From contig NIVC01000764.1 of assembly GCA_002269645.1 (NCBI GenBank), forward strand, positions 124,001 through 188,000: DNA of 64,000 bases. Direction: 5' to 3'. Positions 12,814 through 60,521 of this stretch are shown in pieces. The notes beneath the pieces were generated by a model. That model did no database searches and was not told where the DNA came from. It worked only from the letters and a program-made list of their open reading frames with translations. This DNA is from Macrostomum lignano (Eukaryota). Made by a program: the position numbers and the translations under genes. How positions within the stretch are numbered: position 1 is the first letter of the stretch; each line of letters starts with the position of its first letter.

Positions 12814-13343
12814 TGATGTTAGACAGGTAGTTGACGAACGCATCTCGATAGCGGGTGACGTTGGCCGGTACGTCAGCGATGGTGAATACGAGCTGCTGGT
12901 CCAAGCTGAGCAGGTAGATCGTGCAGGATGCTTTGGCTGAGTACTTGGAATCGGATGCGGTCACATTGAAGTAGAGCGAGCCCGCCATGCTGTCTTGGAA
13001 GTAGGTTCGCTCCCCTGTCTTGAGCACGCCAGTCCGATTGTCTAACGCGAACACGTTCGCGTAGATGCCGCGCTCTTCCAGCTGTAAAGTCAGCTGGCTG
13101 GTGCTGGCCAGCACTGGGGTGATGCTGAATATCAGCGCGCTGTTGTTGCCAGCGTCCAAGTCGGTGACGAACTCGGCGAAGCTGAACACTGTTGTGCCAG
13201 GCGGATCATTGACGTTAACGCCTCCGTAGTATTTTGGTGAGCTCCACACCGGCGGGTTGTCGTTGTCGTCGGCAACGTTGACAACCACCTGCGCCATGAT
13301 CGGGTTAGAAGCGTCGAATGACACCGGAGTGTCGTCCACCCCT
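12814..13343 (-). pseudogene. Internal fragment of cadherin exon 14 lacking both splice sites
   Basis: About 8 substitutions in 530 nt versus 26.84-27.36 kb. Truncated at both ends and abutting a CT-rich tract. Confidence 0.9.
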
Positions 13344-13344
13344 C

Positions 13345-13530
13345 TCTTCTCTCTCCCTTCTCTCCCCTCTTCTTTCTCGCCTTTCTTTTCTCTCTCCTCT
13401 CTCCCCTCTCTCCTCTCTTTTCTCTCTCCTCTCTCCCCTCTCTCCTCCCTCCCCTCTCTCTTCTCTCCCTTCATTTCTCATCATGTCTTATTTCTTATCT
13501 CTTCTATTCCATTTCCTTTCCTCTCTCATC
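13345..13530. repeat. CT-rich low-complexity tract
   Basis: (CTCT/CTCC/CTTT)n. Confidence 0.9.
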
Positions 13531-14047: not shown

Positions 14048-17000
14048 AGCATTATCTTTATGCGTCAGTTTGATTTGCTACTCTCTGTCCAGTGGCATAA
14101 GCGCATATTTGCTCTATTTTTTGTCTTGACATAAAATATTTGGAGAGAATGATGGTCTAGATGCCCGCGTCACACGCGCACAACCTTGGCGCTTTCAATT
14201 CTTTTATCTATGGCCAAGCTTGGCAGTGGATCGGAATTCTCAGGCGTAAAAACCACTAGTAAAATTTGCACCCACCCCAAAAAGGCGTTGGTCTTGGCCA
14301 TAGACAGTCGAAGAAATCGATTGACTTCGTTTCTAGCTAGCAGTCAAGTGGGACGAGATACGGAGTTTAAAGTAATAAGGCAGGACGGAGAAAGAAAAGA
14401 TTTTACTTCGCACTTTACCAGCAAGCAGTGCAAGAACGACAAAAACACCAGCAACGCTTCTTGCAATCACCATACTGACATGGAATTCAGCTCAAAGCGC
14501 TGCTGTGCAGCCACCTGCACCCATACAGCGCAATCTCTAACGGACGAGGGAGTGGCTGTGCGAATGCACAGGTTTCCAGCGGACGACGGAGTTGCGAATC
14601 GATGGAGGCAAATGCTGGAAATCGACTTGGACATCGGAGCCATTCGCAAGATGGGATTGCGAGTGTGCAGTGTGCATTTTACTGACAATCATTACAGCTG
14701 TCCTTCTCTGCGACATGAATATACCACACGTTTGCGATGGAATGCCGTTCCAGACAGGGAGCTGACTCTACCCCGCCTCATTGCACATGACCTGACACAT
14801 TTGGTTTTTCGCAGTGACGAAGAGGCTGACAATCTCTATCCACCTGAACTGCAGCCATTCAACAGCACCGATGGTGAGCCGCCACAGGCCGAAGAGCAGC
14901 AGACAATGCCAACAGCCAACAGCTCAACCAACCAAGGTCATGCTGAACAACGAAGCAATAACATCGCTCAGCTGCGCAGCAAAGTTCGCCGCCAAAAAAC
15001 CACCATCCGACAGATGCAAGCGCGAATAGAAAAAGCAAAAGCAGTCCAGTCGGGTAGCAGCAGCTCAATAGCTACTCGTCTGATGCAGCAGAAGATCAGG
15101 CGTGATGTTCGCAGTCGCGGCATGCGCTGGACCAAAAAAGACATTGCGTGCTCAATTCAGCTGCATCACAAACGCTCGTCAGCTTACCGACTGGTCCGCA
15201 ATAAGTGGAAAATTCCGCTACCATCAAGTTCGACAATTAGGCGGCGAATTCGACAGTATTTCGTATTGCCTGGGATTTGCAACTTGACGATACGATCCTT
15301 GCAGTCCAAGTTTGATGCATCATCGACAAATCAGCAGCGGATTGCTACCATTTGCTTCGATGGAATGAGTCTCACACCCAGCCTGCGCTACCAGCAACAT
15401 CGTGACGTGGTGGTGGGCTGCGATCCACGAACCGCTGATGACAGCAAGGAGCAGTTGCCCAGACCTGTAAACGAGGCCATCGTCGCTGTGCTTCGAGGAG
15501 TCTTTCAGGACTGGAAACAAGCAATCGCATATTATCCTGTTTTTCGAACTCTTGGCCAAGAAGGATTCGGGATAGCTATTGATGAGTGCCTGACAGCTAG
15601 CCACAAGGCCGGGATTAAGGTCGTTGCACTGGTTGCGGATCAAGAGTCAACCCAGTGGGCTCACCTTTCCAGACGGGCTGACACTGCAAATCCTTTTTTA
15701 CGTCACCCTGTAACCGGTGAGCCAGTCTACGTCATCGTGGACATCCCACATTGCCTAAAAAATGCTAGAAACGCCCTGATGAAGAACGACATCAAATTCA
15801 ACGAGTGCAAGCTAGCTAAGTGGCAGCATCTCATCCAGTTTTATCAGAACGACAGCGGCCCATCTCTCCGATTAGCAAGCAAGCTCACCGACGCTCATTT
15901 CAGCTTAGCTCTGGGTCAGAAGATGAAAGTATCGCTCGCAGCACAAGTGTTAAGCCATTCTGTTGCAAGTGGTATCAGGACTTTGGTCCATCATAATGAG
16001 TTATCTGAGGATGCGTTGCAGACAGCTGAATTTGCGAAGCGTCTGAATGACATTTTCGACATGCTGAACTCAGCGCATCTCTATGGCAAAGGCTTCCAGC
16101 AGCCGATTCATCGCGATACTCTATCGGCGCAGATCGACCGTCTGACAGAGGCGGAAGACTTCGTGCGGAGCTGGCGCTTTCTCCCACTGAATGGGCGCGC
16201 TGTTAAGCCTACGATGCCATTCAAAGAAGGGTGGCTCCTATCGCTTTCTGCTACCAAGCAGCTGTGCACTACTCTCATTCGGGACCACCACTTTGACTAC
16301 GTGTGTACTCGCCGATTTACTCAAGATCACGTTGAGGTAAGTTCACAAAATTTATTAAAAGCGAGACTATATTTCCATAATTAAATATTTAAAGATTACT
16401 TCACCCTAATTAGTGGTTCAGCAATGTACAAGAATTTGCATTGATGAAACAAAGGGCATCGTACAATTCTCCTCTTCAGAACCTTTTCTGCATCATCCGC
16501 AGGCACAACGGTTTTAACGACAGACCAGAGCTCAGCTCCTTCGTCGGTGCCCTGCGGTCCGTGGCTGCCAGCGGCCTGGCCCAGCCTGACTCGACGTCTC
16601 GCAACTGCGAAGACGACAACTGTGAGGCTGCCATCATAGCAGCCTGCGCCCCACCGGTGCCGGAGACTGTGTGACTACCAAAGCGGGTCCACAGAACTCA
16701 AGCAGTGTTGTATGCCAGGCACCACAGCAGCAGCTGCTCCAAAAAAACTGGACTCCTGGCAGGGCGCAAGCAATGTCTCGCTGGAAGCTGCTGAGTACGT
16801 TGGCGGATATGTGCTAAAGCGAAGCCGAGTTCTTCACTGTCAGGTGTGCAACTCTTTGCTTACAGCATCCGAATCTGCAGGGGTTCACATCCAGCACAAG
16901 ACCTACTCGCATGCATTCCGCGGGTTGACTGCGCCCTCGCCGGTGGCGCTTGTTGCATTTATGAAGATGGAAGCCGAGTTCGCAGCCCTGACATCCAGCT

Positions 17001-22399: not shown

Positions 22400-38315
<15,916 letters not shown>

Positions 38316-44080: not shown

Positions 44081-47000
44081 TCAGTAGCCTAGTGCGGACA
44101 GCTCGTCGCTGATTCGGCTCAGATAGCCGCTGTCCGGGTAGCCGTGGCTGCGGGATGCGTAGAGTAGAGAAATAATCAATTCTGTTTGACAGTCACGGAC
44201 TCAGAACTGACCTGGCCTATTTATTCGAATCTGACCCAACTTGACCCAAACAGACCCAATTGACCCAACTTGACCCAAACTGACCCAATTGACCCAACTT
44301 GACCCAATTGACCCAAACTGACCCAATTGACCCAACTTGACCCAACTTGACCCAAACTGACCCAACTTGACCCAACTTGACCCAAACTGACCCGACCCAA
44401 CTTGACCCAAACTGACGGCCCAAACTGACCCAACTTGACCCAAACTGACTCAAACTGACCCAACTTGACCCAAACTGACCCAACTTGACTTAAACTGACC
44501 TAAATTGACCTACTAAAACCAAACTGGCCAAAATCAACCCAACTTGACCTAAACTGACCTAAATTGACCTACTAAAACCAAACTGGCCAAAATCAACCCA
44601 ACTTGACCTAAACTGACCTAAATTGACCTACTAAAACCAAACTGGCCAAAATCAACCCAACTTGACCTAAACTGACCTAAATTGACCCAACTTGACCTAA
44701 ACTGACCTAAATTGACCTACTAAAACCAAACTGGCCAAAATCAACCCAAATTGACCCAACGTGACCTACATTGACCCAACTTGACCTAAATGATCCCATA
44801 TTGACCCAAATCGATCCAAAATTGACCTAAACTCACCTAACTTGATCCGAACCCAGATTGACCCAAACTGATCCTAACCTGACCTAAACTGACCCAACTT
44901 GACGCAGATTGACCTAGTTTTCTCCAACTTGACCCAACCTGACCCAGAAAACTCAAAAACTTACTTGGGAGGTCCGCCATTAATCTTGGTCTTGTGGTGC
45001 AGGGTGTTCCACGTGATCGCCATGTTATTTCCGGTGGTCGCTGACTGGCCCACCTGGAATACGATTCGACCATTGAAGGCAGCCCGAAGGCGCTGTACAA
45101 TGCCTCTGCCCTCTTCGTTGTTGGGAAAATAGGCCTCCCTGCTGATGCCCTTGTACTGCACTCCGTCCACGGTTCCGCTGGGAAAGGAGTACTTGATGAC
45201 TATGGTGCCGTTAGAGCGATCGTAGCCTGTAAAAAGACGAATGAAATTAGATAATTCTGACAACGTTTAGACCGGAAGTGCCAGTGCTAATAAATCGTTC
45301 TTTGAATACCACACAGGCACAATCAATTCGGAAATACCTCAACCGGAAGTGGCACAATACATATAGGCTCTAATACTAGTAAATGACACAGTCGTTTATA
45401 AAATCGCAACCTAAACTCTAAGGAAGTGCTACAACTCTAAACCAACGCAACCGGAATTGGTCCAGTAGTCTATAAAATCGCGACCGGAAGTGCTACTGCT
45501 TCAAAAAAACACAACCGGAAGTGGCACAGTAGTTTATAAAATCGCAACGGGAAGTGCTACTACTCAAAAATAACACAACCGGATGTGGCACAGTACTCAA
45601 TAAAATCGCGACTGGAAGTGCAATTGCTTTAAAATAACACAACCGGAAGTGGCACAGTAGTTTATAAAATCGCAACGGGAAGTGCTACTACTCAAAAATA
45701 ACACAACCGGATGTGGCACAGTACTCAATAAAATCGCAACCGGAAGTGCAATTGCTTTAAAATAACACAACCGGAAGTGGCACAGTAGTTTATAAAATCG
45801 CAACGGGAAGTGCTACTACTCAAAAATAACACAACCGGATGTGGCACAGTACTCAATAAAATCGCGACTGGAAGTGCTATTGCTTTAAAATAACACAACC
45901 GGAAGTGGCACAGTAGTTTATAAAATCGCAACGGGAAGTGCTACTACTCAAAAATAACACAACCGGATGTGGCACAGTACTCAATAAAATCGCAACCGGA
46001 AGTGCAATTGCTTTAAAATAACACAACCGGAAGTGGCACAGTAGTTTATAAAATCGCAACGGGAAGTGCTACTACTCAAAAATAACACAACCGGATGTGG
46101 CACAGTACTCAATAAAATCGCGACTGGAAGTGCTATTGCTTTAAAATAACACAACCGGAAGTGGCACAGTAGTTTATAAAATCGCAACCGGAAGTGCTAT
46201 TGCTTCAAAATAACACAACCGGAAGTGGCACAGTAGTTTATAAAATCGCAACCGGAATTGCTACTACTCAAAAATAACACAACCGGATGTGGCACAGTAG
46301 TCTATAAAATCGCAACCGGAAGTGCTTCTACTCCAAAATAACGCAACCGAAAGTGGCACAGTACTCTATAAAATCGCAACCGGAAGTGCTTCTACTCCAA
46401 AATAACGCAACCGGAAGTGGCACAGTAGTTTATAAAATCGCAACCGGAATTGCTACTACTCAAAAATAACACAACCGGAAGTGGCACAGTAGTCTATAAA
46501 ATCGCAACCGGAAGTGCTTCTACTCCAAAATAACGCAACCGGAAGTGGCACAGTAGTTTATAAAATCGCAACCGGAAGTGCTTCTACTCCAAAATAACGC
46601 AACCGGAAGTGGCACAGTAGTTTATAAAATCGCAACCGGAATTGCTACTACTCAAAAATAACACAACCGGAAGTGGCACAGTAGTCTATAAAATCGCAAC
46701 CGGAAGTGCTTCTACTCCAAAATAACGCAACCGGAAGTGGCACAGTACTCTATAAAATCGCTACCGGAAGTGCTTCTACTCCAAAATAACGCAACCGGAA
46801 GTGGCACAGTAGTTTATAAAATCGCAACGGGAAGTGCTACTACTCAAAAATAACACAACCGGATGTGGCACAGTAGTCTATAAAATCGCAACCGGAAGTG
46901 CTTCTACTCCAAAATAACGCAACCGGAAGTGGCAGAGCCCTTCCTCGTGTAATACAATTAAATGGCGATACAGAGATATTTCTAAAATCTTGGCCGAAGG

Positions 47001-49457
47001 TACACACTGGAAGGCAATTGATCTGAGCTCACCGGGCAGCTTGCGCTGATCCACTCGCTCTAGCATAGTCCCATTTGGCGGTTGATTCCCCACGGCCGGC
47101 CGGAAGCGCTGGAAGCAGAGAACGCATTTGCCGTCAGTTGGCAACTCGGAGCTGTTCAAGCGGTCCACGCACTCGCTGCACAGCTGGGTGCCGGCCGAGT
47201 CGCAGTGGAACGGCTTGGCTGGCCGATCGGCTGAGAAGTCCTCCGAGCAGATCGCGCAGGTGCCTGAAGCTTCAGCGGGATCAGCGGTGGCCGGGGCGGT
47301 GGCCGGGGCAGATTCAAACTGCTGCTGATTATCCGGTTCAACTTCCATCGATTCGGCGGCCTCAGAGGCGACGACCGCGGCTTCGTCGGTGTCAGTGTCG
47401 ACTTCGGAGTCAGGTGGCGGAGGGGCGGAGGCCAGCGAGACTGGAAATTGAGTTGGGTAGAGAGGGTTAAGAATGGGAGGGTAAATAATGGGAAAGTAAA
47501 GAATTAGGGGGTAGAGAAGGGGAGGGTAAAGAAGGGGAGGGTAGAGAAGGGGAGGGTAGAGAAGGGGAGGGTAGAGAAGGGGAGGGTAGAGAAGGGGAGG
47601 GTAAAGAAGGCGAGGGTAAAGAAGGGGGGTAAAGAAGGCGAGGGTAAAGAAGGGGGGTAAAGAAGGCGAGGGTAAAGAAGGGGGTAGAGAAGGGGAGGGT
47701 AGAGAAGGGGAGGGTAGAGAAGGGGAGGGTAGAGAAGGGGGTAGAGAAGGGGAGGGTAGAGAAGGGGAGGGTAGAGAAGGGGAGTGTAGAGAAGGGGAGG
47801 GTAGAGAAGGGGAGGGTAGAGAAGGGGAGGGTAAAGAAGGCGAGGGTAAAGAAGGGGAGGGTAGAGAAGGGGAGGGTAAAGAAGGCGAGGGTAAAGAAGG
47901 GGGGTAGAGAAGGGGAGGGTAGAGAAGGGGAGGGTAGAGAAGGGGAGGGTAGAAAAGGCAAGGGTAAAGAAGGCGAGGGTAAAGAAGGGAAGGGTAGAGA
48001 AGGGGAGGGTAAAGAAAGTAAGGGTAAAGAAGAGGGTAAAGAATGGAGGGTAAATAAGTGGAGGGCAAAGAATGGGAGGGTAGAGAAGGGGAGAGTAGAG
48101 AATGGGAGGGTAGAGAATGGGAGGGTAGAGAAGGGGAGGGTAGAGAAGGGGAGTGTAGAGAAGGGGAGGGTACAGAAGGGGAGGGTACAGAAGAAGAGGG
48201 TGGAGGAGGGTAGAGAATGAGGGCACACAAGACAATAGAAGAATGTAGAGAAGACAAGGGAACAAAGAAGGTCACGTCTGTCTCTCACGAGGCGCCTCGG
48301 CAACCCACGAAGCGGCGCTATTTCCGGCGCCAGGATTCGCCGGCGGAGGCGCTTCTTCGCTGGGCAACCGCCTGGCAACGGCGCCAATCAGCGCCTGCAG
48401 GGAGTCGCGGGCCACGCAGCAGACGTGCAGGCGCAGCGAGGCGCCGCCCAAGGCCCCAGACTCGACCAGACGGACAACGGCGGTGGCCAGGGCCTCGGCC
48501 CATTCGTGCGAGCCGCCGCCCCACAGCGGCAAGTTGTTGCCAAGTGTTGGCATGGCAACCCGATTGACGCCTTCGCTGACGGCCAAGCGAGCCAGCCGGC
48601 TCATCAGCTGTTCCAAGCAGCCGTCCATGGCCCGCCTTCGGGGGAGGGGGGTTCGAATTTGAATTCGCGCCAATTTAATTCAAAGAAAAGTAACGAATTA
48701 GTTTATAGAACAAATTGAGAAAACCGAGAAGTTAAAGTTTTACGTGCAAATTAACAATTTTTTACAAATTTTCTAAACCAATTAAATCCCCTCAAACCCC
48801 AACCAACCAGAAGATCTAATTCCCCTCAAACCCCAACCAACCGGAAGATCTGATCCCCCCAAACACCAACCAACCGGAAGATCTGATCCCCCCAAACACC
48901 AACCAACCGGAAGATCTGATCCCCCCAAACACCAACCAACCGGAAGATCTGATCCCCCCAAACACCAACCAACCGGAAGATCTGATCCCCCCAAACACCA
49001 ACCAACCGGAAGATCTAATTCCCCTCAAACACCAACCAACCGGAAGATCTAATTCCCCTCAAACACCAACCAACCGGAAGATCTAATTCCCCTCAAACAC
49101 CAACCAACCGGAAGATCTAATTCCCCTCAAACACCAACCAACCGGAAGATCTAATTCCTCCAAACACCAACCAACCGGAAGATCTAATTCCCCTCAAACA
49201 CCAACCAACCGGAAGATCTAATTCCCCTCAAACACCAACCAACCGGAAGATCTAATTCCCCTCAAACACCAACCAACCGGAAGATCTAATTCCCCTCAAA
49301 CACCAACCAACCGGAAGATCTAATTCCCCTCAAACACCAACCAACCGGAAGATCTAATTCCCCTCAAACACCAACCAACCGGAAGATCTAATTCCCCTCA
49401 AACACCAACCAACCGGAAGATCTAATTCCCCTCAAACACCAACCAACCGGAAGATCT

Positions 49458-49499
<42 letters not shown>

Positions 49500-52400
49500 T
49501 TATTAGTAGCTCCTTGGCAGCAGAGAGAAGAGCCCTCCATCTAGCCCTTGACCTGATCGAGGAGGAATCTCCGGAAAGCGCCCTCATCCTGACCGACAGC
49601 AAATCCGCCGTCCTGGCCGTCGCCAAGGAGAAGCTCTCCAGGAATCGATCCCATTTCCTCCTGATCGAGAGACTGAGGAGACTTAGTTCCCAATGCAAGA
49701 TCCTGGGGACTCTCCTGGACCAGAGCACGATCCCGATCGAATTTGAAGTGCTCGATAGACAAGTCAGAAACCGTTGGAAGCCGGTCACGAAAGACAAAGC
49801 GTCTGGCGGAGATCTACGGCACCACCCGAGACCCCGGCAACTTCGGCAGGAAGAACTCAGTGTTGCTCGCCCAGCTCCGATCCGGTCACTGTAAATGGAC
49901 ACCCTACTGGCGCCAGAAGATCGGGCTAGAGGAGCCTCAACCATGCCCAGATTGCGGAGAAAATCCCGACAAGGACCACTGGTTCCTCTGCCCCAGGTGG
50001 GACTGCCTACGGCTAGAGCTCGGACTCACGGAAGGGAAATGATGATGTTTGAGTTCCTGAGGAAGGCCCACCCGGAATGGCTGGCCTGATCTCGGAGACT
50101 CGTTCCGATGACAAACACACACAACAACAAAATACGCGACCCCGCATGCAAGTCAGTTAAAGCAGGGTGCGTCAGATGGCGCGCCGCAGAGCCTGGGAGA
50201 GAACAAAGTCCGCTCTCTTGGCAGTGTCGGGCGCCCCGGCGTCGCACAGCAGGCAGTCCACGTATCGACGGGTTCGGGCCTGACCCCTGCCTGAACGGAC
50301 CCTGCAAGGTGAGCAGCAGGACGTCCTGAACAGGTTGGCGGCAGAGGGCCCTCAACCCGGATCACGTGGCCCGCCAGTTGAAGTCGCCGCCGGCGCAGGA
50401 TGATGGACGGGCGCTGCAGCTTGGCCCGATCGTACAGGGCCTCGGTTCCGACGCTCTCGTTAGCTCGAAAGGCCGCACGGAGCAGCCCTGAGTGCGCCGA
50501 GTCCAGCTGCCGCTCTAGCGTAGCCGTCAGCGTCCATGTCTTGGCGTTGTAGAGCAGGACGGTTTCGACCACCGCCTGCCACAGCCGAGCCCTCTGGCGG
50601 TCGGGCAGCGCTTCGGGCTGGAGGACGGCTCGGATCGAACGAAAGGCCGCCCAGGCAAGTCCTCTGCGCCGCCGGAGGTCTTCTTCCACGTGGGGCACCA
50701 GACCGCCGAGGTAGGTGAACCGCTGGCAGCGTGCGAGCCTGGTCGTCTGCCCGTCTGCGCCGCGGCACGTCAGGTCCGCTGGGATGTCGGCCGGCACAGT
50801 CAGCACCTCGGTCTTCAGCGTGTTGACGATCAGACCGACGCTCGATGCCACCTCGACCAGCCTGTCGATCTGGCGCTGGACGCCTTCAACGGACGAGGAC
50901 AGGAGGGCGAGGTCGTCGGCGTAGCCAAGTACGCTCAGGCGCTTTTCGCGATGGCGGCGACCGATGCGTCTGCGCAGCAGGAAGCCGTCATTAGCCGGGG
51001 GGAGTGCGGTCCGAAGCACCCAGTCCAGCAGCAGCACGAAGAGGAACGGCGCTAGCGTGTCGCCCTGCAGAACTCCTGATGAAGTGTCGAACCAGGCCGT
51101 CTGCCGTCACCACAGCAGCTCGAGTATCGCAATACAGCGGCATGACAGCGTCGATTAGCTGCTGGGGTACCCGGTAGGCTCGAAGGACAAAGGGAAGCGC
51201 GGCTCTCAACACGGAGTCAAACGCCTTTCGAAAGTCAACGAAGACAATGATCAGCGTAGACTGGCGGATGCGCGCCTCCTCGATGACACGGCGGAGTGCA
51301 AGGATCTGTGTCACTGTACCGCGTTGCGGCCGGAATCCGTTCTGCTCGTACCGCAGGTACGGGTCCAGCACCGACTGGAGACGATCGAGCAGCAGCCGGT
51401 TGAAGAGCTTCGCGGTGCAGGACATCAGCGAGATCCCGCGGTGGTCTTCTTTTCTTCGGTGGTCTGCGTTGTCCCTGCCTTCTTCAGGATCGGCACGATG
51501 TGCGCGACGGTCCACTCGGTAGGCGCAGGAGCGCCGGCGAGCACGCGGTTCATGACGCCTGTGACCTAGGAGGCCACACAGCGGAGCCGCAGCGCTTCGA
51601 ACAGGACTTCGTCGGGGCCGAGCGCCTTGCCGCCTGATGTTTTCCGAGCCAACAGCACAACGTCCTCCGTGGTGACTGGTCTGGTGCAGAAGTCCTTCTC
51701 AGCTGGGAGCGGCGTGTCCAGTGGGAGCGCAAAGCTGGCGGGCAGCGGCGACGCGGGCGCGTTCACGATGCCGGCGAAGAAGTCGCGCAATTCATTCCTG
51801 CGCTCCTCCGGGGTGTCGCCGGCCAGGTTCAGCGCCACGCGCTTTTTGCGCCCCGTCAGAGTCCGGACGGCCGTCCACACTGCGCGGTTCTTCACGTCGG
51901 GGCCGGCTGCAGTGATGGACCTAATGGCGTCGTCGACAGCGGCCTGCTGCCGCTCGTCAAGAAGGCGCTCAAATGCTTCTTCAGCGTTGCCCGTGGGCCG
52001 CCGGTTTCTGCGGAGTCGCTCGATGTTGAACAGCGCCTGCCTGATGATGGGGTCGCTCTGCCAGACAGGCAGCGATTTCTGCGCTGGCCGCATCAGCGAG
52101 ACCTTCTGCTCTGCAGCGGCTCTAACGGCGGTGCTGATGTCGAAATACTCCACCTCGCGCTGGTCTCCAAGCGCGCCGACGAAGGCGCCCGCGAATTGAC
52201 GCTTCACGCGGGTGTCCAACCGTGGCCGCTGCTTTGGCGGTCGGTAGAGCTGGTCGCGGAGCCGCAAGTCGCAGATCAGGAGTCGGTGGTCTGACCGGAG
52301 AGCCAGCGGAGCCATGGTGTCGCAGTTGGTGACGCGGCGGCGCTCGCGAGTGCGAACCAGCGCATGATCGAGTTGCGCCAGTCTCCTCGTGGCATTCCGC

Positions 52401-53858
52401 CCGCGTGCGTTCCGCCGCCTTCTCTTGCAGCCCGCAAAGGTGACCAGGCGGGCAGGGGGCTTGCGGAACTGGGTGTTCGCGGACACCAGGTCCAGCCGGT
52501 CAAGCAGGTCCTCCAGCGCCTCGGTGTTGGCGTTCTCGCGTCCCGCGACAAAGGGCGAGCGCTCGGACCTCCGCGGAACTGCGTTCAGGTCTCCGAGCAT
52601 CGCCAACGTGTCGCGGTTTGGCACGTCTTCCAGCTGCCCAGCCAGGAAGTCGAAAAAGGCACGAGCCTTCTCGGGGTGAGCAGCGGTGGGTGCATACGCG
52701 CAGAACAGCCGGATGCAGCGGGCGCGCAGTCGCAGGTCGACCCGCATCAGTCGCGGGGACAGCGAGATGCAGTGCACGCTCTGCTGGAGGCGCGGTCCGA
52801 TCAGCACGCCGACACCGCCCCGGCCGCGGTTGTCTGCCAACGTGTACAGGAGGCTCCAGCCGGCTCCGAGGTCCTCAGAGTGGAGCCCCGGCTCAGCCAC
52901 GATAGAGACCTCCTGCAGCGAGACGAGGTCCAGCTGTAGGTCGTGGGCCAGCTGGACAAGTATGGTGCGACGCCAGGGGGCCTTCAGAGTTCGGCAGTTC
53001 ATCGTGCCGTTAATATCTTTAACTCCTTTGTGAGCCACGGAAAATCTAATTCCTCCCAAACAACAACCCAACCGGAAGATCTAATTCCCCTCAAATCCCA
53101 ACCAACCCGAAGCCCTTATTCCCCTCAAACTCCAACCAACCGGAAGCTCTAATTCCCCTCAAATCCCAACCAACCGAAAGCTCCAATTCCCCTCAAATTC
53201 CAACCAACCGGAAGCTCTAATTCCCCTCAAACCGCAACCAACCGGAAGCTGTCTCCGCTGCCCAGCTGCCGCTCCATCCGGCGGTCATTGGGCAAGGCTA
53301 TAAATAGAATCTTGCGGAAGCCGCGGCTGCCCCGATGGCACAGGTAGGTATCGCCAAACGGCATCGCCCCGGACGACAGGCTGGTCACGTGATGCCTGCA
53401 GTCGGCGGCGATTTCCTGGCTCCGGCTGGCAACCGCCTTGGCGAGGCCGAACTCAAGCGACAGTTTCAAGTTGCTCGGCACGATCACAAGGTCGGCCCGC
53501 TGGTTGGCCGGAAGCGATGTCAGGTCGGAAAGGTCGACGCGGAGCTGGCAAGACGGCCCGAGTTGGAAATCGGCCGAGTCATCCTTGATCTGATGCTGAT
53601 GGTGTACAGCAGCCAGAGATGGCGGCTGGGGCGCTGGGAGTTGCGGCTGCGGCTGCGGCTGTGGAGGTGGCGGCTGCTGAGATTCGAGCTGCGCTGGTGA
53701 CGCAGGGGAGGCAGCGGCAGCCGCCTGCAAGGCTTCGGGAAACAGCGGGCGGCGGTTACGTCTGACTGCCGCCGGAGCGGGGGCGGAGACTGGAGCGGCT
53801 GAGGCGGCGGCAGAACCTGCTGGCTGTGGCTGCGGGGCAAAAAAAACATGAGCTTTCA

Positions 53859-53919
<61 letters not shown>

Positions 53920-53936
53920 CACAGACATAGAGACAT

Positions 53937-53979
<43 letters not shown>

Positions 53980-53998
53980 GGCAGACAGACAGACAGAC

Positions 53999-54062
<64 letters not shown>

Positions 54063-54098
54063 GGACAGACAGACAGGCAGGCAGGCAGACAGACAGAC

Positions 54099-54151
<53 letters not shown>

Positions 54152-54276
54152 GGCAGACAGACAGACAGACAGGCAGGCAGGCAGACAGACAGGCAGACAG
54201 ACAGAAAGAGAGACAGACAGACAGATAGACAGGCAGACAGACAGACAGACAGACAGACAGACACACAGACAGACAC

Positions 54277-54307
<31 letters not shown>

Positions 54308-55633
54308 CAGACTGACACTAAAGCAGACAGACAGAGACAGACAGGCAGACAGACAGAGACAGACAGGCAGACAGACAGACAGTAGCAGAAAACAACTCAC
54401 TGGACTTGAAGCAACAGTTTGGAATGCAATTCCACTGCTAGCAGCAGAAGCTACAGGCTGATTTTGCTGTTGTTGTTGATAATTGGAAAGCCATTCCAAA
54501 GCAGCTTCCAATACCTCATCATTGCAGGCAACAATGGAGACAGTTGGCAGCTTGGCTAATCCAGGACTAGGTGGACCACTTGGGTTCAAATAGTATGCAG
54601 TGGCACCAAAAAAAGTTTTTAGATCTTTGGCAATAGCTTCAAAGTTGAGCATTTCACTTGGCTGCTGCAAGATGCAAGCTCTGGCAGTTGCAGAGGTTGT
54701 CTAAAAGGTATGAATATTTATTACAAGCATACAAAGTTTTTAAAATAAAAAATTATAAAAAAACTAAAAACATTAAATAGAATTTTTAAGTCTTACCTGA
54801 TCATAAGAATCAATAATAGTTGTTAAATGACCATTAATAATGAATTGGCTTGTAGTAGCTAGTAATGACTCCAAATTTGTATCTAAAATTATGTCATTTG
54901 TATTTATTTAATAATAAACAAAGCTACAACAAAAATAGTTCAAACATACACTTTCAAGCAATATTCTAAATTATAAAAGTAATCTTATGAATTTATAATT
55001 AATAATATCATTAAAAACCTAAAAGTCAACCTTTAAATAGACATAAAACATAATATTATTAAATTTATTTATTGCTTTGAAATCTTAATAAAGAAAATTA
55101 AGAATACTTAAATTAAAGGCTAAGAAAATATTAATATTAAATGATAAATTTCAATTCTTAATGCCTAAAGAATGTGTAAAATGCATATCTATTCTAAGTA
55201 ATAGTTTTGGATTTAAACTTTCAAGTGGAAATAGATATATAGGATAAATAATTAGTTTAGGAAGCTGTAGCATTACTAGAAGACAGTATTAGGCCCTACT
55301 ATATAGCACCATTTAAAGGAACAATTTTTGTAATACATAGCTTGTAATAGCATATAGGCCTATTGCTCTTTGCTCATTAGAAAATGCATAATAATTTTGC
55401 TGTTGTCAGAAATGCTATTACTCTAAGTCTAACTTCAATTTTGTATTTTATAATTATTTTTACACTCAAAAAGCAAAGTTGTAAAATACCTTTCGTTCGC
55501 ATGAAAACTTTGGCTTGCGACTCCAAATTTTTATAAGGTCGAATAACACAGATAAATGACTCTGGAAACGAATACTGAAAAAAAGCATGCAGTGCTAGCC
55601 AATGTGTTTCATTTGATTTAGTCAAACTACATT
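44081..55633 (-). CDS. Macrodomain-RING-DTC protein (Deltex/DTX3L-like E3 ligase fused to a divergent macrodomain), at least 732 aa, 5' end not located
   Basis: Exons 55633-55490, 54882-54797, 54700-54401, 53829-53243, 48635-48289, 47440-47033, 45226-44965, 44147-44081; all GT-AG, phase-compatible and open. Macro: LRVDLSDLT...ADLVIVPSN...RKILFIALP...[10 protein letters not shown]...[12 protein letters not shown]: CAIC...CSEC...CVLC. DTC: [51 protein letters not shown]. The two 5'-most exons are less certain. Confidence 0.88.
44225..44945. repeat. 10-bp satellite (TGACCCAACT/TGACCCAAAC)
   Basis: Fills the last intron of the Deltex-like gene. Confidence 0.95.
45300..46935. repeat. About 32/64-bp satellite with ACCGGAAGTG core and 128-bp higher-order repeat
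   Basis: Identical ORF ends recur every 128 bp (45675, 45803, 45931, 46059, 46187); 64-bp dimers further right. Confidence 0.95.
47460..48220. repeat. 15-bp purine-rich minisatellite (AGAAGGGGAGGGTAG)
   Basis: Fills intron 47441-48288 and is pyrimidine-rich on the transcribed sense strand. Confidence 0.95.
48780..49456. repeat. 34-bp minisatellite (AACACCAACCAACCGGAAGATCTAATTCCCCTCA), about 19 copies
   Basis: The same array resumes at 53040-53250 on the other side of two LINEs. Confidence 0.95.
49457..50132 (+). mobile_element. 3' fragment of an RNase H-containing LINE (I/Ingi-like) flanked by (ACA)n
   Basis: [10 protein letters not shown]...ILTDSKSAV RNase H; LAQLRSGH...CPDC...DH..LCP Zn knuckle; (ACA)n at 49457-49499 and about 50112-50130. 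Confidence 0.75.
50140..53040 (-). mobile_element. RTE-clade LINE (APE + RT), several frameshifts
   Basis: [75 protein letters not shown]. Confidence 0.9.
53040..53250. repeat. Left-over part of the 34-bp minisatellite overlapping the exon 5' splice site at 53243
   Basis: About 6 units containing AACCGGAAG. Confidence 0.9.
53857..54380. repeat. (GACA)n microsatellite filling intron 53830-54400
   Basis: Direct reading. Confidence 0.97.
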
Positions 55634-56542
55634 CTGAAAACTCCACCACAAAAGAAAACATTTTTAGTTTAAATACTGAATAAATGGAACTGCTAAAGCA
55701 AATAAAACTCTGACCCTAATATAACAGCTTTTCAGCAATTTAATGATGAGAACCGGGATTACTCTTGATTAGAATCGAAAACGAAAAATCTCAAAGTTTC
55801 TTGTAAGCGCGATAAACTGAATTTTCTAACTAGTTTTTATGGAAAGTATTATAACGCAATTTTTCATAAAGGTTCTTTTTTAAATTTATTGAAGTCCATA
55901 GGAGCAAACCATTATTAGAAACAAACTAAAGTCAGTAGTATTTTTTAACATTTTATTATTACACAAATGACGTAAGGGTAAATCGAAACGGGCATAAAAC
56001 ATACGCTCGTATCTACGGCGGACCCAGTGGCACATCAGGTGCTCCCAACGATGCATAGTAAAAATTTGCTATGTATGCAAACTATTAGACCGACATCAAA
56101 TGAGAAAATGATTAAGACGACCGGCCCTAAATACTGCAGCGTTATCAAGCGCAGGGGCGGATCCAGCAGGTGGGGGCCAAAAGGAGGCCCATGGCCCCCT
56201 TCAGTCGCGGCCCAGTAGTGTTTTTGGTATAGCTGCATATATACATGTATGGCTTTACTCAGATCAATGATTAAGACATATGTATATATATTATACATAT
56301 GTACAATAATACATGACTACATGTATTTAGTACGTGTACATGAATGTACATGTACTAAAAATATACATGTTTTGGCGGCTTGCTGCGCAAGGCGAAAATT
56401 AAAGGAACACGGTTGGTTTTATATTTGATTATGCCCGTGGGCTAAATAGAGTAGCGCGGTGCGTAAACGAAAAAGTGGTGTCATAGATTAAAGTGAAAGT
56501 CATTAGGCTAGCCGCCACACAGCTCCCCCCCCCAGCACCAAG

Positions 56543-59500
56543 CTACTTGCTGAAGTGTACTGGCCGACACTTCCGATGAGGCTGTCGGCGACGCTGAACA
56601 ATGGTTGGCGGCGCTGCTGGCTGTGTCATATCCGTGTGCTCGGCTGGCTGCCGAAGTGGCGAGTCTGTAGCTCTCCAACCGGTGTGAGGCGAAACGATAC
56701 TGACTGGTGCCCGCCTGGGTCGACCTCGAGGGCGTAGCGCCGGCTGTGGAATGGGATCAGCAGTGTTCAACAGCGCAGGCTTTAACCTGTCCACGCTGAC
56801 TCGATCTTTCCGGGTGCCTAGATCTAACAGAAAGGCTTTGGCTTCCCGCTCAATGACCTTGAATGGCCCATCATACGGTCTTTGCAACGCCGTGCGGTGG
56901 CCGTCTCGACGGACGAATACGAACGTGCAGGTATCGAGGGCCGCGGGCCAAGCAGATGGACGGCTGCCGTGGTGCGACGTTGGCACCGGCCGAAAAGCCT
57001 GCACTGCTCTGCGCACTTGCAGCAGGAACTGGTCGTAGCCCAGAGTGTCGGGTGGGCTGGGTAGTAGGCACTCTCCGGGTACGCTGATAGGTGCCCCGTA
57101 CACCAACTCTGCTGATGATGCTGGCAGATCTTCCTTGGGAGCCGTGCGGATGCCGAGAAGCACCCAGGGCAGCTCGTTGACCCATGTCGGTCCGGATAAG
57201 CGCGCCATCAATGAAGCCTTTAATTGCCGATGAAATCGCTCGACCAGCCCATTCGACTGCGGGTGAAAAGCCGTTGTCCGGTGCAGCTGCATTCCGAGTA
57301 GCCGGGAGCAGTTCGTCCATAGCTGTGAAGTGAACTGCGAGCCCCTGTCCGATGTAATGTCACTTGGCACGCCAAAGCGGGTGACCCAATGGGAAATAAA
57401 AGCTGATGCACAGGCTGCTGCTGAAGTATCCGTCATGGGAATTGCCTCTGGCCACCGAGTGAAGCGGTCCACGATGGTAAACAAGTGAGTGAAACCCTGT
57501 GACTGCGGCAGCGGTCCTACCAGATCCACGTGGACATGGGCAAAACGCTGTCCGGGGACCCCGATGCCTTCGATGGGTGCGGCGACGTGTCGATGGACTT
57601 TAGCTGTCTGGCAAGCGACACAGGTCCGGGCCCACTGGGTAACGTCCCGGTTCATTTTTTCCCACACAAATTTTTCGGCCACCAAATGGCGCGTGCTGCG
57701 AACCGATGGGTGCGCGAGGCCGTGAATTGCGTCAAAAACAGCGCGGCGAAACTCCGGAGGCACGAATGGGCGTGGCCGACCGGTAGAGGTGTCGCACAAC
57801 AACACCAGTCCTGGGCCGATCTCCACTCGCGCCAGCTGAAGGCTACTGCTTGTGTGAGCCACTGGGACCACCTGTTGCGCCCTCGCCATCTCCTCAAAGT
57901 TCACGCCGGGGAGCCACTGCAACTGAACTGCTGCCGCCGTACACCGAGAAAGCGCGTCCGCTGCCGGGTTCTCTTTGCCCGCGATGTGCTGGATATCCGT
58001 TGTGAACTCGGATATGTAAGCTAAGTGTCGCTGCTGCCTGGCTGACCACGGATCCGAGATTTTTTACATAGCTGCGACCAGTGGCTTGTGGTCTGTGAAA
58101 GCAGTGAAAACCCGACCTTCTAGAAAGTAGCGAAAGTGCCGGACAGCCAGGTATAATTGGCTAGCAACTCGCGGTCGAAAGCACTGTATTTCTGCTCCGG
58201 AGCACGGAGCTGGCGACTGAAGAAAGCCAGCGGTTGCCAGCCGTTGCCAACTCGCTGCTCCAGAGCGGCACCAATAGCGATGTCAGAAGCGTCCACGGTC
58301 AGGCCGATCGGCGCCTTTGGCAGTGGGTGCGCCAGCATTGCCGCACCTGCCAGGGCCTGCTTAGCATTGTTAAATGCGGCCGTCAGCTCGGGTGTCCAAC
58401 GGACCAGTTTGCCTTTTCCAGCAGTAGCCACATGAATGGGGCGCAGTAGCTGAGCGGCTCGCGGCACAAAGCGGTGGTACAAGTTTACCATGCCGGCGAA
58501 CTCCTGCAGGCCCTTGACGGTGGTGGGCGGTGCAAAACGAACGACAGCGTCAACTTTTGAGGGCAGCGGCACGGCTCCCTGAGCGCTGATTCGATGGCCG
58601 AGGAAATCAATTTCGCTGCGGCCGAACTGGCACTTCGCGGGGTTGACTAGAAAACCATTGCTGGCCATACGTTGGAACAGCGTTCGCAAGTGCTCCAAGT
58701 GCTGATCTGGGTTGTGACTGGCCACTAGGAAATCGTCAATGTAAGCAAATACGAAATCCAAGTCTTGGCAAACAGAGTCTACTAGGCGCTGGAAAGCCTG
58801 GGCCGCGTTTTTTAACCCGAAAGGCATCCGCAGAAATTCAAAAAGTCCAAACGGGGTGATTACGGCTGTCTTTGGAACATCTGTAGGCGTTACTGGCACC
58901 TGATGATATCCACGGACGAGGTCGATTTTTGAAAAAACTGAGCATCCGGCCAGTCGCGCTGAGAAATCCTAAATGTGCGGCACTGGATAGCGATCTGGCA
59001 CAGTGATATCATTTAGGCGCCTGAAATCGCCACAAGGTCGCCAGCCCTCCGAAGACTTGGGCACCATGTGCAGGGGCGATGACCAAGGGCTGTTTGACCT
59101 GCGCACGATGCCGAGCTGCTCCAAGAGTCGGAATTCTTCTTTGGCCACTGCCAGCTTGTCCGGTGGCAGGCGGCGGGGGCGGGCATGGACCGGCGGGCCG
59201 TTGGTCGGGATGTGGTGTTCGACCCCGTGGCGCGGCTGGGCTCGGCGGAAACTCGGCTCGGTGAGGGCAGGAAAATCTGCTAGCAGCTGGCTATATGGGT
59301 CCGCAACAGCGGCTGCGGAGAGCTGCAAGCCAGGGCCGGCTCCGTTCAAAAGGTGGACGCTCGCCAGGGATTGGGCGTCGAGCAGGCGCCGCTGCGGCAG
59401 GTCCACCAGCAACCCGTGGTGCCGGAGGAAATCTGCGCCGATTAGTGGTCGGGAAACCGCTGCCAGAACGAAAGGCCACGAGCAACGCCGGATTCCAAGA

Positions 59501-59730
59501 TCCAGAGTGAGCTGGCGTGTGCCGAAAGTCTGGATTTTACTGCCGTTGGCTGCATAGAGCGGTGGTCCTTGGCGCTTCAGTCGGGCGTCTGTTCCGGCGA
59601 CCGGGAAAATACTGACCTCGGCGCCTGTGTCCACTAGGAAGCGCCGGCCTGACTGTACATCCGGGATGAGGAGCCGACTGCTGTCGCCGGCCGCCGAGCT
59701 GTTCACTGACTGCCGGCCTGCTCGTTTCCC
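56543..59730 (-). pseudogene. pol: Pol (PR-RT-RNaseH-IN) with TAG at about 58969, frameshift at about 58165 and TAA at about 58068
   Basis: [64 protein letters not shown]. Confidence 0.93.
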
Positions 59731-60521
59731 TGAAACTTGCATGGTGCTTCGCAGCGTCTAGCCTTCGCGCCGAACTTCTTGTGATAGTAACAAAGACCTT
59801 TGGCTTCCCCGGCGCGACCTTGGGGTGGCTGAGTCCTGCTAAAGCGGTTGGTGCCGCTCTGACGTGCGACTGCGATCACAGGAAGGTCGGGCTGCTGAAC
59901 TTCTGCAACCACTGGCTGCGGTCGGCTGGCCCAGAGCTTGTCGGCGAGGAGCGCCACTGCTCGCGGGTCTTTAAAATCAGCGGAGACTAACACCATGCGG
60001 ATGTCCACCGGAAGCTGCTGGCGGAAAAGCTCTTCAAAAAGCAGGCACGGCGAATGGTCGCCCAGCAGAGCCAACATTTCGTCCATTAGTTCGGACGGCC
60101 GCCTATCGCCGAGGCCAGCTATGTTGAGCAACCGGTTGGCCCGCTGTTGTCGCGACAAACTAAAAGTGCCAAGCAGGCGAGCTTTCAGCTGCATGTACTT
60201 GCCCGTGTTGGGAGGGCTCTCAAGCACGTCTAGGAGTCGCTCGGCAGACTGTTGGTCAAGTGCTGCGACCAGGTAGTGGTATTTGGTCTCGTCCTGTGTA
60301 ATGCCTCGCAATGTGAACTGCGCTTCTGCTTGGATGAACCAAGCTCGGGGCTGGGAGGTCCAGAACTGCGGCAGCTTGAGTGCCACGGCATTGATGGGAG
60401 CTGTGGTTCCGCCGACTGCAAAGGTGACTTCAGGTTCTGAAGGTTCTGAAGGTTCTGAAGCATTGACGGCAGCTCCGTCAGTTGTGCTACCGTTAGCTTC
60501 TTCGTGTTCGGGCATACTCAA
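59703..60521 (-). CDS. gag: Gag (272 aa) with CHCC motif
   Basis: KLPQFW...WFIQAEAQF...TKYHYLV; [18 protein letters not shown]. Confidence 0.92.

What the first reader, a model, noticed from the sequence alone, without database searches (positions are those of the whole stretch)
44081..55633. Single-chain macrodomain-RING-DTC protein: a PARP9/DTX3L-like ADP-ribose reader and ubiquitin ligase in one gene
Seen: eight phase-compatible open exons encode an N-terminal region, a macrodomain split across a 4.6-kb intron, an acidic linker, a RING and a complete Deltex C-terminal (DTC) domain. The DTC tail [30 protein letters not shown] has His...His 12 residues apart and Glu 14 residues later, the spacing I recall for the DTX2 H582/H594/E608 triad. 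Established: Deltex RING-DTC modules bind ADP-ribose/NAD+ and can ubiquitylate ADP-ribose; DTX1/2/4 use WWE domains for targeting, while DTX3L relies on the macrodomains of its partner PARP9. Inference: this is a Rosetta-stone fusion, a self-contained ADP-ribose-directed ubiquitin ligase possibly acting in invertebrate innate immunity or DNA damage. The ORF track hides it because satellites and LINEs fill the introns. I cannot tell whether this architecture is already catalogued.
Basis: partly seen in the sequence, partly recalled or inferred. Interest (0 to 1): 0.9.

Follow-up and report, generated by a model that had tools for sequence, protein, structure and literature searches.

The report
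Flatworm Deltex ligase with hidden macrodomain
This is a real, already-catalogued gene of the flatworm Macrostomum lignano that joins a very divergent macrodomain fold, a RING-like finger and a complete Deltex C-terminal domain in one protein; a 2026 preprint reports a macrodomain in DTX3L before PARP9 emerged, so it is a new member of a known kind.

Summary
Eight GT-AG, phase-compatible minus-strand exons (55661..44081) translate exactly to UniProt A0A1I8GAK8 (742 aa, Macrostomum lignano). The window is 100% identical to GenBank NIVC01000764.1, whose RNA-seq-derived model PAA77106.1 joins the macro-like, RING and DTC exons. The DTC is unambiguous (Pfam E=5e-39), with the DTX2 catalytic His/Glu and nearly all ADP-ribose contacts conserved. 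The RING is atypical and sub-threshold in Pfam. No sequence method finds the macrodomain: no Pfam hit, and only M. lignano paralogs among 1.84 billion representatives. An AlphaFold model (pLDDT 72) matches only macrodomains in the PDB, led by PARP14 MD2. In a paralog, one uninterrupted exon encodes most of the macro fold plus the RING, so the fusion is genuine. ADP-ribose binding by the macro fold is unproven because both glycine-rich loops are altered. The architecture is not new: a 2026 preprint reports that DTX3L lost a macrodomain when PARP9 arose. Verdict: a divergent new member of a known kind. The added annotation is a macrodomain that profile searches miss.

The parts
55490..55661 (-). 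Exon 1: ATG and an RRM-like N-terminal domain (aa 1-57)
   Evidence: Part of the 8-exon model that exactly matches P0005. It is 98.8% conserved in homeolog L003 and conserved in paralog P0008. AF2 gives beta-alpha-beta-beta-alpha-beta topology, with only weak RRM hits. It is not included in the GenBank model.
54797..54882 (-). Exon 2 (aa 58-86)
   Evidence: 100% identical in L003.
54401..54700 (-). Exon 3: second small alpha/beta N-terminal domain and a poly-Q stretch. The GenBank transcript model starts at 54664, just after TTGCAG.
53243..53829 (-). Exon 4: Pro/Ala/Gln-rich linker, then the N-terminal half of the macrodomain fold (fold from about 53580)
48636..53242 (-). Intron 4 (4.6 kb): a 34-bp satellite at both ends, with a frameshifted non-LTR retrotransposon (endonuclease + RT) between them
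   Evidence: arrays 48783-49458 and 53038-53250. (Exo_endo_phos 1.8e-9; RVT_1 1.9e-14 and 4.4e-10). An intron of about 4.8 kb lies at the same position in L003 (coordinates).
48289..48635 (-). Exon 5: C-terminal half of the macrodomain fold (to about 48353), then the start of the linker
47033..47440 (-). Exon 6: acidic linker, RING-like zinc finger (about 47264-47109), and the first residues of the DTC
44965..45226 (-). Exon 7: core of the DTC domain, including W and HH of WNTLHHKT
44081..44147 (-). Exon 8: DTC tail [22 protein letters not shown] and the stop codon

Best explanation
Window 44081-55661 (minus strand) is an intact Macrostomum lignano gene for a Deltex-family E3 ubiquitin ligase with a DTX3L-like layout. 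Its parts, in order, are an RRM-like N-terminus, a second small alpha/beta domain, a low-complexity linker, a highly divergent macrodomain fold, an acidic linker, a RING-like finger and a complete DTC domain.

Shown here: the gene structure; the DTC with the His-Glu pair and ADP-ribose-contact residues; the predicted macrodomain fold; and that the macro fold and RING lie on one polypeptide.

[quoted passage not shown] The macro fold would act in cis as a targeting or reader module for ADP-ribosylated substrates. That job is done in trans by PARP9 macrodomains for vertebrate DTX3L.
For: Gene model. The eight GT-AG exons translate exactly to UniProt A0A1I8GAK8. The window is identical to GenBank NIVC01000764.1. 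That record's annotation derives from RNA-seq-based transcripts (PMC5730564), and its protein PAA77106.1 runs from exon 3 through the macro fold, RING and DTC.

Single chain. At the paralog locus L001, a single 249-codon open exon encodes about three quarters of the macro fold, the linker and the RING.

Maintenance. Homeolog L003 keeps all 8 exons. It differs by 18 synonymous and 11 non-synonymous changes; within the macro region the count is 3 and 0.

DTC. Pfam PF18102 scores E=4.9e-39, 134 bits against a cut-off of 25. PDB matches are DTX3L 5e-29, DTX2 3e-23 and DTX1 2.7e-22. The equivalents of DTX2 R535, S567, W578, H582, H594 and E608 are all conserved; their roles are given in PMC7442474 and PMC7615817.

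Macro fold. The AF2 model has pLDDT 72.4 and pTM 0.77. Foldseek against the PDB gives 156 hits at E<=1e-3. Nearly all of the top 50 are annotated macrodomains or macrodomain-derived constructs, led by PARP14 MD2 (E=1.2e-7, TM 0.67/0.72), then macroH2A and PARP9 MD1/MD2. An hhalign comparison with PARP14 MD3 and PARP15 MD2 is collinear over 119 columns (E=0.0018). The segments that align to the ligand-cleft loops are 71% identical between paralogs, against 24% elsewhere (p=1.3e-7).

RING. A profile of the region hits the CNOT4 RING (E=0.0016) and the TRIM32 RING.
Against: No macro HMM hit appears even at E<=10, and there is no sequence hit to any solved macrodomain. The macro model comes from a 2-sequence alignment. 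Its pLDDT is below 50 over model residues 39-54, which in the alignment correspond to the glycine-rich loop 1. That loop reads S-L-E-F-G-L-A instead of the usual glycine run, and the second loop keeps only one Gly. The hhalign probability is only 15%.

The RING is below Pfam thresholds (E=0.36). It has adjacent H-C where ligands 3 and 4 are normally C-x-H. The DTC lacks six residues (the HPNPG loop) that human DTX proteins and the paralog keep.

The GenBank transcript model lacks exons 1-2, so the mature N-terminus is uncertain. No biochemical or expression data were examined.
Confidence: 0.6

Rival explanations
1. The middle domain is a degenerate macrodomain. It keeps the fold but no longer binds ADP-ribose, and instead serves as a scaffold or protein-interaction module, or binds another ligand. 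ADP-ribose recognition would then be done only by the DTC pocket.
For: No macro HMM or sequence match was found. Loop 1 has bulky E-F or N-F residues where the glycines normally sit, and the second Gly of loop 2 is replaced by Asn or Ser. The model has low confidence in loop 1. The DTC alone is sufficient to bind ADPr/PAR in DTX2 (PMC7442474).
Against: The adenine-contacting Asp of the (G)D(I/L)T motif and one Gly in each loop are retained. In the alignment, PARP14 MD3 shows the same single-Gly loop 1 pattern, and PDB entry 4abk is an MD3 complex with ADP-ribose. The cleft-forming segments are the best-conserved parts between paralogs that are only 34% identical. That argues for a conserved ligand site of some kind.
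Confidence: 0.3
2. The macro fold is an eraser, not a reader. It would be an ADP-ribosyl or ADPr-Ub hydrolase that regulates the ligase's own product in cis, as proposed for PARP9 MD1 and PARP14 MD1.
For: PARP9 MD1 is among the structural matches (9qyd). The PARP14 review describes the hydrolytic function of PARP9 MD1 as negatively regulating DTX3L/PARP14 signals (PMC13224862). An Asn is present at the D+7 position in this copy (DLVIVPSN).
Against: The glycine-rich loop is absent. From general knowledge, hydrolytic macrodomains have this loop. The D+7 Asn is Ser in the paralog. The best sequence and structure affinity is to PARP14 MD2 and MD3, which the PARP14 review describes as ADPr-binding, with hydrolysis assigned to MD1.
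Confidence: 0.07
3. The single chain is an annotation artefact. Macro-encoding and RING-DTC-encoding exons would belong to separate genes, wrongly joined across the 4.6-kb LINE-bearing intron or across the 0.85-kb satellite intron.
For: The GenBank model is flagged partial and differs from the UniProt model at the 5' end. Many M. lignano transcripts are polycistronic precursors resolved by trans-splicing (PMC5730564).
Against: The paralog encodes the macro C-terminal part, linker and RING in one uninterrupted exon. Splice phases match across all junctions. The RNA-seq-derived GenBank models of two loci span both parts. All exons stay intact in the homeolog, with a non-synonymous:synonymous ratio of 11:18, well below the roughly 3:1 expected without selection.
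Confidence: 0.03

Closest known systems
DTX3L (with PARP9) of vertebrates
   Same: A RING followed by a DTC, with the catalytic His and Glu. The DTC's best solved match is DTX3L (3pg6, E=5e-29). The N-terminus is RRM-like, followed by small alpha/beta domains. The association with PARP14/PARP9-type macrodomains is functional.
   Different: Here the macro fold is in the same chain, whereas human DTX3L borrows the PARP9 macrodomains. The residue equivalent to DTX2 H594 is His here and Tyr719 in DTX3L. No tandem KH-like array is evident. The RING ligand spacing is atypical. The HPNPG loop of the DTC is deleted.
Macrodomain-bearing DTX3L orthologues of lineages without PARP9 (Picard et al., bioRxiv 10.64898/2026.04.23.720386)
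   Same: The reported features are an RRM with RING-DTC in most metazoan orthologues, and a macrodomain in DTX3L that was lost when PARP9 emerged. The gene here is best filed as a flatworm member of this kind.
   Different: The word search of the preprint's text found no mention of flatworms, and its figure and species list were not seen. The macrodomain here is too divergent for Pfam or InterPro-type detection. Orthology to DTX3L, as opposed to another ancient DTX lineage, was not established by phylogeny.
DTX1/DTX2/DTX4 (WWE-WWE-RING-DTC)
   Same: An ADP-ribose-related reader domain sits N-terminal to a RING-DTC in one chain. The H594-equivalent His is conserved. All ADPr pocket residues of DTX2 are conserved.
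   Different: No WWE or proline-rich Notch-related region is present.
PARP14 macrodomains 2/3 and PARP15 macrodomain 2
   Same: These are among the closest structural neighbours of the middle domain, and the only macrodomains with a collinear, though weak, profile alignment. They share the pattern D-x-[IV]-[IV]-x(11)-G-[VL]-[SA]-K-A and P-x-[IL]-G in loop 2.
   Different: Identity is 11-21%. Loop 2 lacks the second Gly. There is no ART domain in the protein.
RNF146 (Iduna)
   Same: Both put an ADP-ribose-reader domain and a RING in one polypeptide, giving ADP-ribosylation-dependent ubiquitylation (established knowledge).
   Different: RNF146 uses a WWE domain that binds iso-ADPr and allosterically activates a canonical RING, which then modifies lysines. 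It has no DTC and no macro fold.

Membership tests
Deltex (DTX) RING-DTC E3 ligases | C-terminal DTC domain (Pfam PF18102) above the gathering score | tested here: met
   134 bits against a cut-off of 25, E=4.9e-39, covering profile positions 2-132 of 133. The paralog scores 157 bits.
Deltex (DTX) RING-DTC E3 ligases | Catalytic His-Glu pair (DTX2 H582/E608), strictly conserved among DTX proteins | tested here: met
   The ungapped alignment with 6y22_A places LHHKT and SDEL on H582 and E608. The residues' roles are given in PMC7615817.
Deltex (DTX) RING-DTC E3 ligases | ADP-ribose pocket residues R535, S567/S568 (main chain), W578 and H594 (DTX2) | tested here: met
   R (GISRE), S-A (GQSATTG; the S568 equivalent is Ala, a main-chain contact), W (ITWN) and H (NHGYPD) are aligned. 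The residue list comes from PMC7442474.
Deltex (DTX) RING-DTC E3 ligases | RING finger immediately N-terminal to the DTC, with cross-brace Zn ligands and an E2-binding Ile | tested here: inconclusive
   Pfam RING models give only E=0.36-2.1, below cut-off. The pattern is C-x2-C-x13-H-C-x7-C-x2-C-x14-C-x2-C: eight candidate ligands, but no ligand at the canonical C3+2 position. A profile of the region hits the CNOT4 RING at E=0.0016 and TRIM32 at 0.07. The equivalent of Ile414 (C-A-I-C) is present. The last CxxC aligns with the DTX1/2 RING.
Deltex (DTX) RING-DTC E3 ligases | E2-dependent ubiquitin transfer to ADP-ribose or to ADP-ribosylated substrates | not testable with these tools
   Needs a biochemical assay.
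Macrodomain (Pfam Macro clan) | Significant match to a macro sequence profile | tested here: not met
   No Pfam macro family matched at E<=10 for the whole protein, the isolated region or the paralog. phmmer over 1.84e9 representatives found only M. lignano proteins. No PDB macrodomain was found by sequence or profile.
Macrodomain (Pfam Macro clan) | Macrodomain three-layer alpha/beta/alpha fold | tested here: met
   The AF2 model (pLDDT 72.4, pTM 0.77) was searched with Foldseek against the PDB. There were 156 hits at E<=1e-3. Nearly all of the top 50 are annotated macrodomains or macrodomain-derived constructs, with TM 0.6-0.75 normalised on the target. This is a prediction, not an experimental structure.
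Macrodomain (Pfam Macro clan) | ADP-ribose-binding signature: adenine-contacting Asp, glycine-rich loop 1, G-x-x-G loop 2 | tested here: inconclusive
   The Asp of the D-[LI]-T motif is conserved. Loop 1 is SL[EN]FGLA, with one Gly. Loop 2 is [LI]G[NA][NS]LP[LY]W, with one Gly. The loop 1 pattern resembles that of PARP14 MD3 in the alignment. The model is unreliable in loop 1.
Macrodomain (Pfam Macro clan) | Binding or hydrolysis of ADP-ribose derivatives | not testable with these tools
   Needs ITC, DSF or hydrolase assays.
DTX3L subfamily | N-terminal RRM (reported for most metazoan DTX3L orthologues) | tested here: inconclusive
   AF2 on a 2-sequence alignment gave only one of five models at pLDDT 69, with beta-alpha-beta-beta-alpha-beta topology at aa 2-73. 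The Foldseek hits are mostly RRM or KH proteins, but none is better than E=9e-3. There is no Pfam RRM hit.
DTX3L subfamily | Orthology to DTX3L rather than to other DTX lineages (phylogeny; Tyr at the H594-equivalent position) | tested here: not met
   Among the solved DTCs, DTX3L scores highest: 104 bits against 85 and 82. However, the position is His, as in DTX1/2, not the Tyr719 described as strictly conserved in DTX3L. No phylogeny was run.
DTX3L subfamily | Partnership with a PARP9/PARP14-type protein | not tested
   No PARP gene lies in the 64-kb window or next to the paralog.

The most novel reading that the evidence does not exclude
The macro fold has drifted beyond the reach of all sequence profiles, yet it keeps a strongly conserved and re-patterned cleft (SLxFGLA, FGDT, LPND, GxxLPxW). 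It may therefore have acquired a new specificity, for example for the ADPr-ubiquitin ester made by its own DTC, or for ADP-ribosylated nucleic acid. The protein would then be a self-contained writer and product-reader with feed-forward behaviour, and a lineage-restricted, fast-evolving immune effector in flatworms.
Probability: 0.1. Interest if true: 0.6.

Novelty: new member of a known kind. Interest (0 to 1): 0.3.

Why it matters
The gene gives a concrete invertebrate example of a macro fold and a RING-DTC in one chain. A recent preprint reports that DTX3L carried a macrodomain until PARP9 emerged. The example also shows that domain-based surveys using Pfam or InterPro would miss this macrodomain. 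M. lignano supports transgenesis (PMC5730564), so the gene could be used to ask what a cis macrodomain contributes to ADP-ribose-directed ubiquitylation. It does not open a new class of system. The gene model and the general architecture are already public.

Tried and rejected
1. A full-length homolog search and an alignment search were swamped by low-complexity words, because only 8000 candidates are scored.

2. A word-indexed search with the macro region alone returned nothing, not even the self hit. I treat this as a limit of the tool. The exhaustive HMMER scan did find the self hit and the paralog.

3. Pfam at E<=10 on the isolated macro region of both paralogs gave no family.

4. A profile of the macro region against PDB sequences gave only chance hits, to rhabdovirus phosphoprotein at E~0.09. 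Rejected.

5. The N-terminal model gave no Foldseek hit better than 9e-3, so the RRM assignment is left open.

6. Two literature searches for other descriptions of Macro+RING+DTC proteins in invertebrates found nothing beyond the 2026 preprint.

7. I looked for a PARP neighbour in a head-to-head arrangement like PARP9/DTX3L. There is none. Upstream lies an LTR retrotransposon and downstream a cadherin gene.
Full report
WHAT IS THERE

The finding lies on the minus strand. Reading the three minus-strand frames and the sequence at each boundary gives six exons, E3 to E8. They join through canonical GT..AG sites in compatible phases into one 656-codon frame. Adding two upstream exons gives an eight-exon CDS: E1 55661-55490, E2 54882-54797, E3 54700-54401, E4 53829-53243, E5 48635-48289, E6 47440-47033, E7 45226-44965 and E8 44147-44081. 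Its translation is identical, residue for residue, to P0005 = UniRef100_A0A1I8GAK8. That entry is a 742-aa protein of the flatworm Macrostomum lignano named 'E3 ubiquitin-protein ligase'.

The window is 100% identical over 29.9 kb to GenBank NIVC01000764.1, part of assembly GCA_002269645.1 (Mlig_3_7). In that record the gene is annotated from window 54664 to 44081 as PAA77106.1, 'hypothetical protein BOX15_Mlig011245g1, partial'.

The introns are filled with tandem arrays whose units are 4, 10/59, 15, 34 and 64 bp long. The 4.6-kb intron 4 also carries a frameshifted non-LTR retrotransposon, with Exo_endo_phos at 1.8e-9 and RVT_1 at 1.9e-14 and 4.4e-10.

IS IT ONE GENE?

Four lines of evidence say yes.

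- All splice phases match.
- The GenBank annotation of this assembly was built from a genome-guided RNA-seq transcriptome, with boundaries set by trans-splicing and poly(A) evidence (PMC5730564). Its proteins at two loci (PAA77106.1 and PAA84102.1) run from exon 3 through the macro-like region, RING and DTC.
- M. lignano has a paralog that is 38% identical (P0008, 640 aa) with the same layout. At its locus L001, a single uninterrupted 249-codon exon (12637-13383) encodes about three quarters of the macro-like domain, the linker and the RING. No intron lies there to be mis-joined.
- The homeologous copy L003 keeps all eight exons with GT-AG sites. It differs by 18 synonymous and 11 non-synonymous substitutions. 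Within the macro-like region the count is 3 synonymous and 0 non-synonymous. A non-synonymous:synonymous ratio of 11:18 is well below the roughly 3:1 expected without selection.

DOMAINS

DTC. Pfam PF18102 matches at E=4.9e-39, 134 bits against a cut-off of 25, over nearly the full profile. The solved relatives are DTX3L (3pg6, 5e-29), DTX2 (6y22, 3e-23) and DTX1 (6y5n, 2.7e-22). The C-terminal 47 residues align to DTX2 without gaps. With chain index + 387 = DTX2 numbering, the query carries the equivalents of W578, H582, H594 and E608, and further upstream R535 and S567. S568 is Ala, but that contact is through the main chain. These are the ADP-ribose-contacting residues (PMC7442474) and the catalytic His-Glu pair (PMC7615817). 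This copy lacks six residues (the HPNPG loop) that human DTX proteins and the paralog retain.

RING. Pfam RING models reach only E=0.36-2.1. The pattern is C-x2-C-x13-H-C-x7-C-x2-C-x14-C-x2-C. That gives eight possible ligands, but an adjacent H-C sits where a RING normally has C-x-H. A two-sequence profile of the region hits the CNOT4 RING (1e4u, E=0.0016) and the TRIM32 RING (E~0.07). The final CxxC aligns with that of the DTX1/2 RING. I call it a RING-like finger of atypical spacing.

Macro. No sequence method detects it. There is no Pfam family at E<=10 and no PDB hit by sequence or profile. An exhaustive phmmer scan of 1.84 billion representatives found only the protein itself and the M. 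lignano paralog. A ColabFold model built from the two paralogs has pLDDT 72.4 and pTM 0.77. Foldseek against the PDB gives 156 hits at E<=1e-3. Nearly all of the top 50 are annotated macrodomains or constructs derived from one: PARP14 MD2 (5o2d, E=1.2e-7, TM 0.67/0.72), Capsaspora and human macroH2A, PARP9 MD1 and MD2, PARP14 MD3, MacroD-type and viral macrodomains. From my own recollection, the SPX entries in that list are crystallisation fusions that carry a macrodomain tag.

I then recovered the true sequences of PARP14 MD3 (4abk) and PARP15 MD2 (3v2b) from the PDB search. A profile-profile comparison with them is collinear over 119 columns (E=0.0018, probability 15%). It aligns D-L-T with [25 protein letters not shown] with [30 protein letters not shown] with IIHVIGGND, and MPTLGNN with LPAIGTG.

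So the fold is a macrodomain, with PARP14/PARP9 and macroH2A macrodomains as the nearest solved neighbours.

N-terminus. AF2 predicts a beta-alpha-beta-beta-alpha-beta unit (aa 2-73) and a second small alpha/beta unit. Only one of the five models is confident (pLDDT 69). Foldseek returns mostly RRM and KH proteins, with no E-value better than 9e-3. This is compatible with the RRM reported for DTX3L orthologues, but it is not established.

HOW IT PROBABLY WORKS

What is shown: the DTC has every residue known to be needed to bind ADP-ribose and to activate its 3'-hydroxyl.

What is inferred: the RING-like finger brings E2~Ub, and the protein ubiquitylates ADP-ribose on modified substrates, as DTX2 and DTX3L do. 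The macro fold, held in cis by a roughly 85-residue acidic linker, would help select ADP-ribosylated substrates.

Whether the macro fold still binds ADP-ribose is open.

- Against binding: loop 1 is SL(E/N)FGLA rather than a glycine run, loop 2 keeps only one Gly, and the model is least confident exactly at loop 1 (pLDDT below 50 at model residues 39-54).
- For binding: the adenine-contacting Asp is kept. The single-Gly loop 1 pattern is the same as in PARP14 MD3, which has been crystallised with ADP-ribose (4abk). The four segments that align to the cleft are 71% identical between paralogs, against 24% elsewhere (Fisher p=1.3e-7).

COMPARISON AND NOVELTY

The closest known system is DTX3L/PARP9. 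A 2026 preprint (bioRxiv 10.64898/2026.04.23.720386) makes three relevant statements. DTX3L predates the radiation of extant Metazoa. Most orthologues carry an RRM plus RING-DTC.

The flatworm gene fits that kind, with some differences. It has His at the H594-equivalent position, where DTX3L has Tyr719. Its RING is atypical. Its macrodomain is invisible to HMMs. I did not run a phylogeny, so membership in the DTX3L lineage specifically is not established. Membership in the Deltex family is.

No PARP gene lies in the window or beside the paralog. The rest of the genome could not be searched.

VERDICT

The gene is a new and very divergent member of a known kind. The genuinely new piece of annotation is a macrodomain fold that public domain annotation misses: the precomputed Pfam annotation lists only PF18102 for these proteins. 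Interest is about 0.3.

Noticed in passing
window 53038-53250 and 48783-49458: The donor site of exon 4 (53243|53242) lies inside the first unit of a 34-bp satellite. Each following unit repeats the motif AGCTTCCG|GTTGGTTG, giving a row of cryptic copies of the donor. The same satellite family flanks the LINE on the other side of intron 4, so the LINE appears to have inserted into the array. The paralog has no intron at this position.
   Followed up: partly
window 54664 (minus strand), inside exon 3: The GenBank gene model starts at 54664, immediately after TTGCAG, five codons before Met (MLNFEA...). This looks like a spliced-leader trans-splice acceptor. A short isoform of about 640 aa lacking the RRM-like exons 1-2 may therefore exist alongside the 742-aa form. 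Exons 1-2 are 99-100% conserved in homeolog L003 (1992-2163 and 2781-2866), upstream of its annotated gene start.
   Followed up: partly
L001 10001-15537 compared with window 44081-55661: Intron positions differ between the two paralogs. The first two introns and the last one (before HGYPD) are shared. The paralog splits the macro fold after IVAAK and the RING after CMDRY. The window gene splits the macro fold at DSFR|RAMDG and the DTC at KLPG|YD. This is considerable intron turnover within one gene family.
   Followed up: partly
window about 47300-47320 (exon 6): GenBank protein PAA77106.1 lacks seven residues (FESAPAT) that the identical genomic DNA encodes, and no GT-AG flanks the missing 21 nt. 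The cause is probably a transcript from another allele or homeolog mapped onto this locus. This linker is also the most variable part between the homeologs.
   Followed up: no
window 45090-45140 (exon 7): The DTC of this copy lacks six residues corresponding to the conserved E-H-P-N-P-G loop of human DTX1/2/3L. The paralog P0008 retains that loop (REHPNPG).
   Followed up: no
window 56543-60521, minus strand: An LTR-type retrotransposon with long open reading frames lies about 0.9 kb upstream of the gene's ATG, in the same orientation. Pfam confirms the integrase (Integrase_H2C2 and rve) and the RT plus RNase H. The upstream ORFs, likely gag and protease, were not scanned.
   Followed up: partly
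window 14186-16384, plus strand: An intact 732-aa ORF carries THAP plus TNP-like RNase H and GTP-binding insertion domains. It is a P-element/THAP9-like transposase and appears undisrupted.
   Followed up: partly
window 12728-13474 and 26767-27351, minus strand: Two ORFs share a long cadherin-like peptide that looks essentially identical by eye ([33 protein letters not shown]...). This suggests a duplicated cadherin exon block about 14 kb apart. The large cadherin gene at about 26.7-33.6 kb is the downstream neighbour of the Deltex gene.
   Followed up: no
(tool behaviour): The word-indexed protein search with the 215-aa macro region returned no hit at E<=10. The database contains P0001 with this exact stretch, which the exhaustive search found at 2e-136. 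Negative results from the word-indexed search should not be read as absence.
   Followed up: yes
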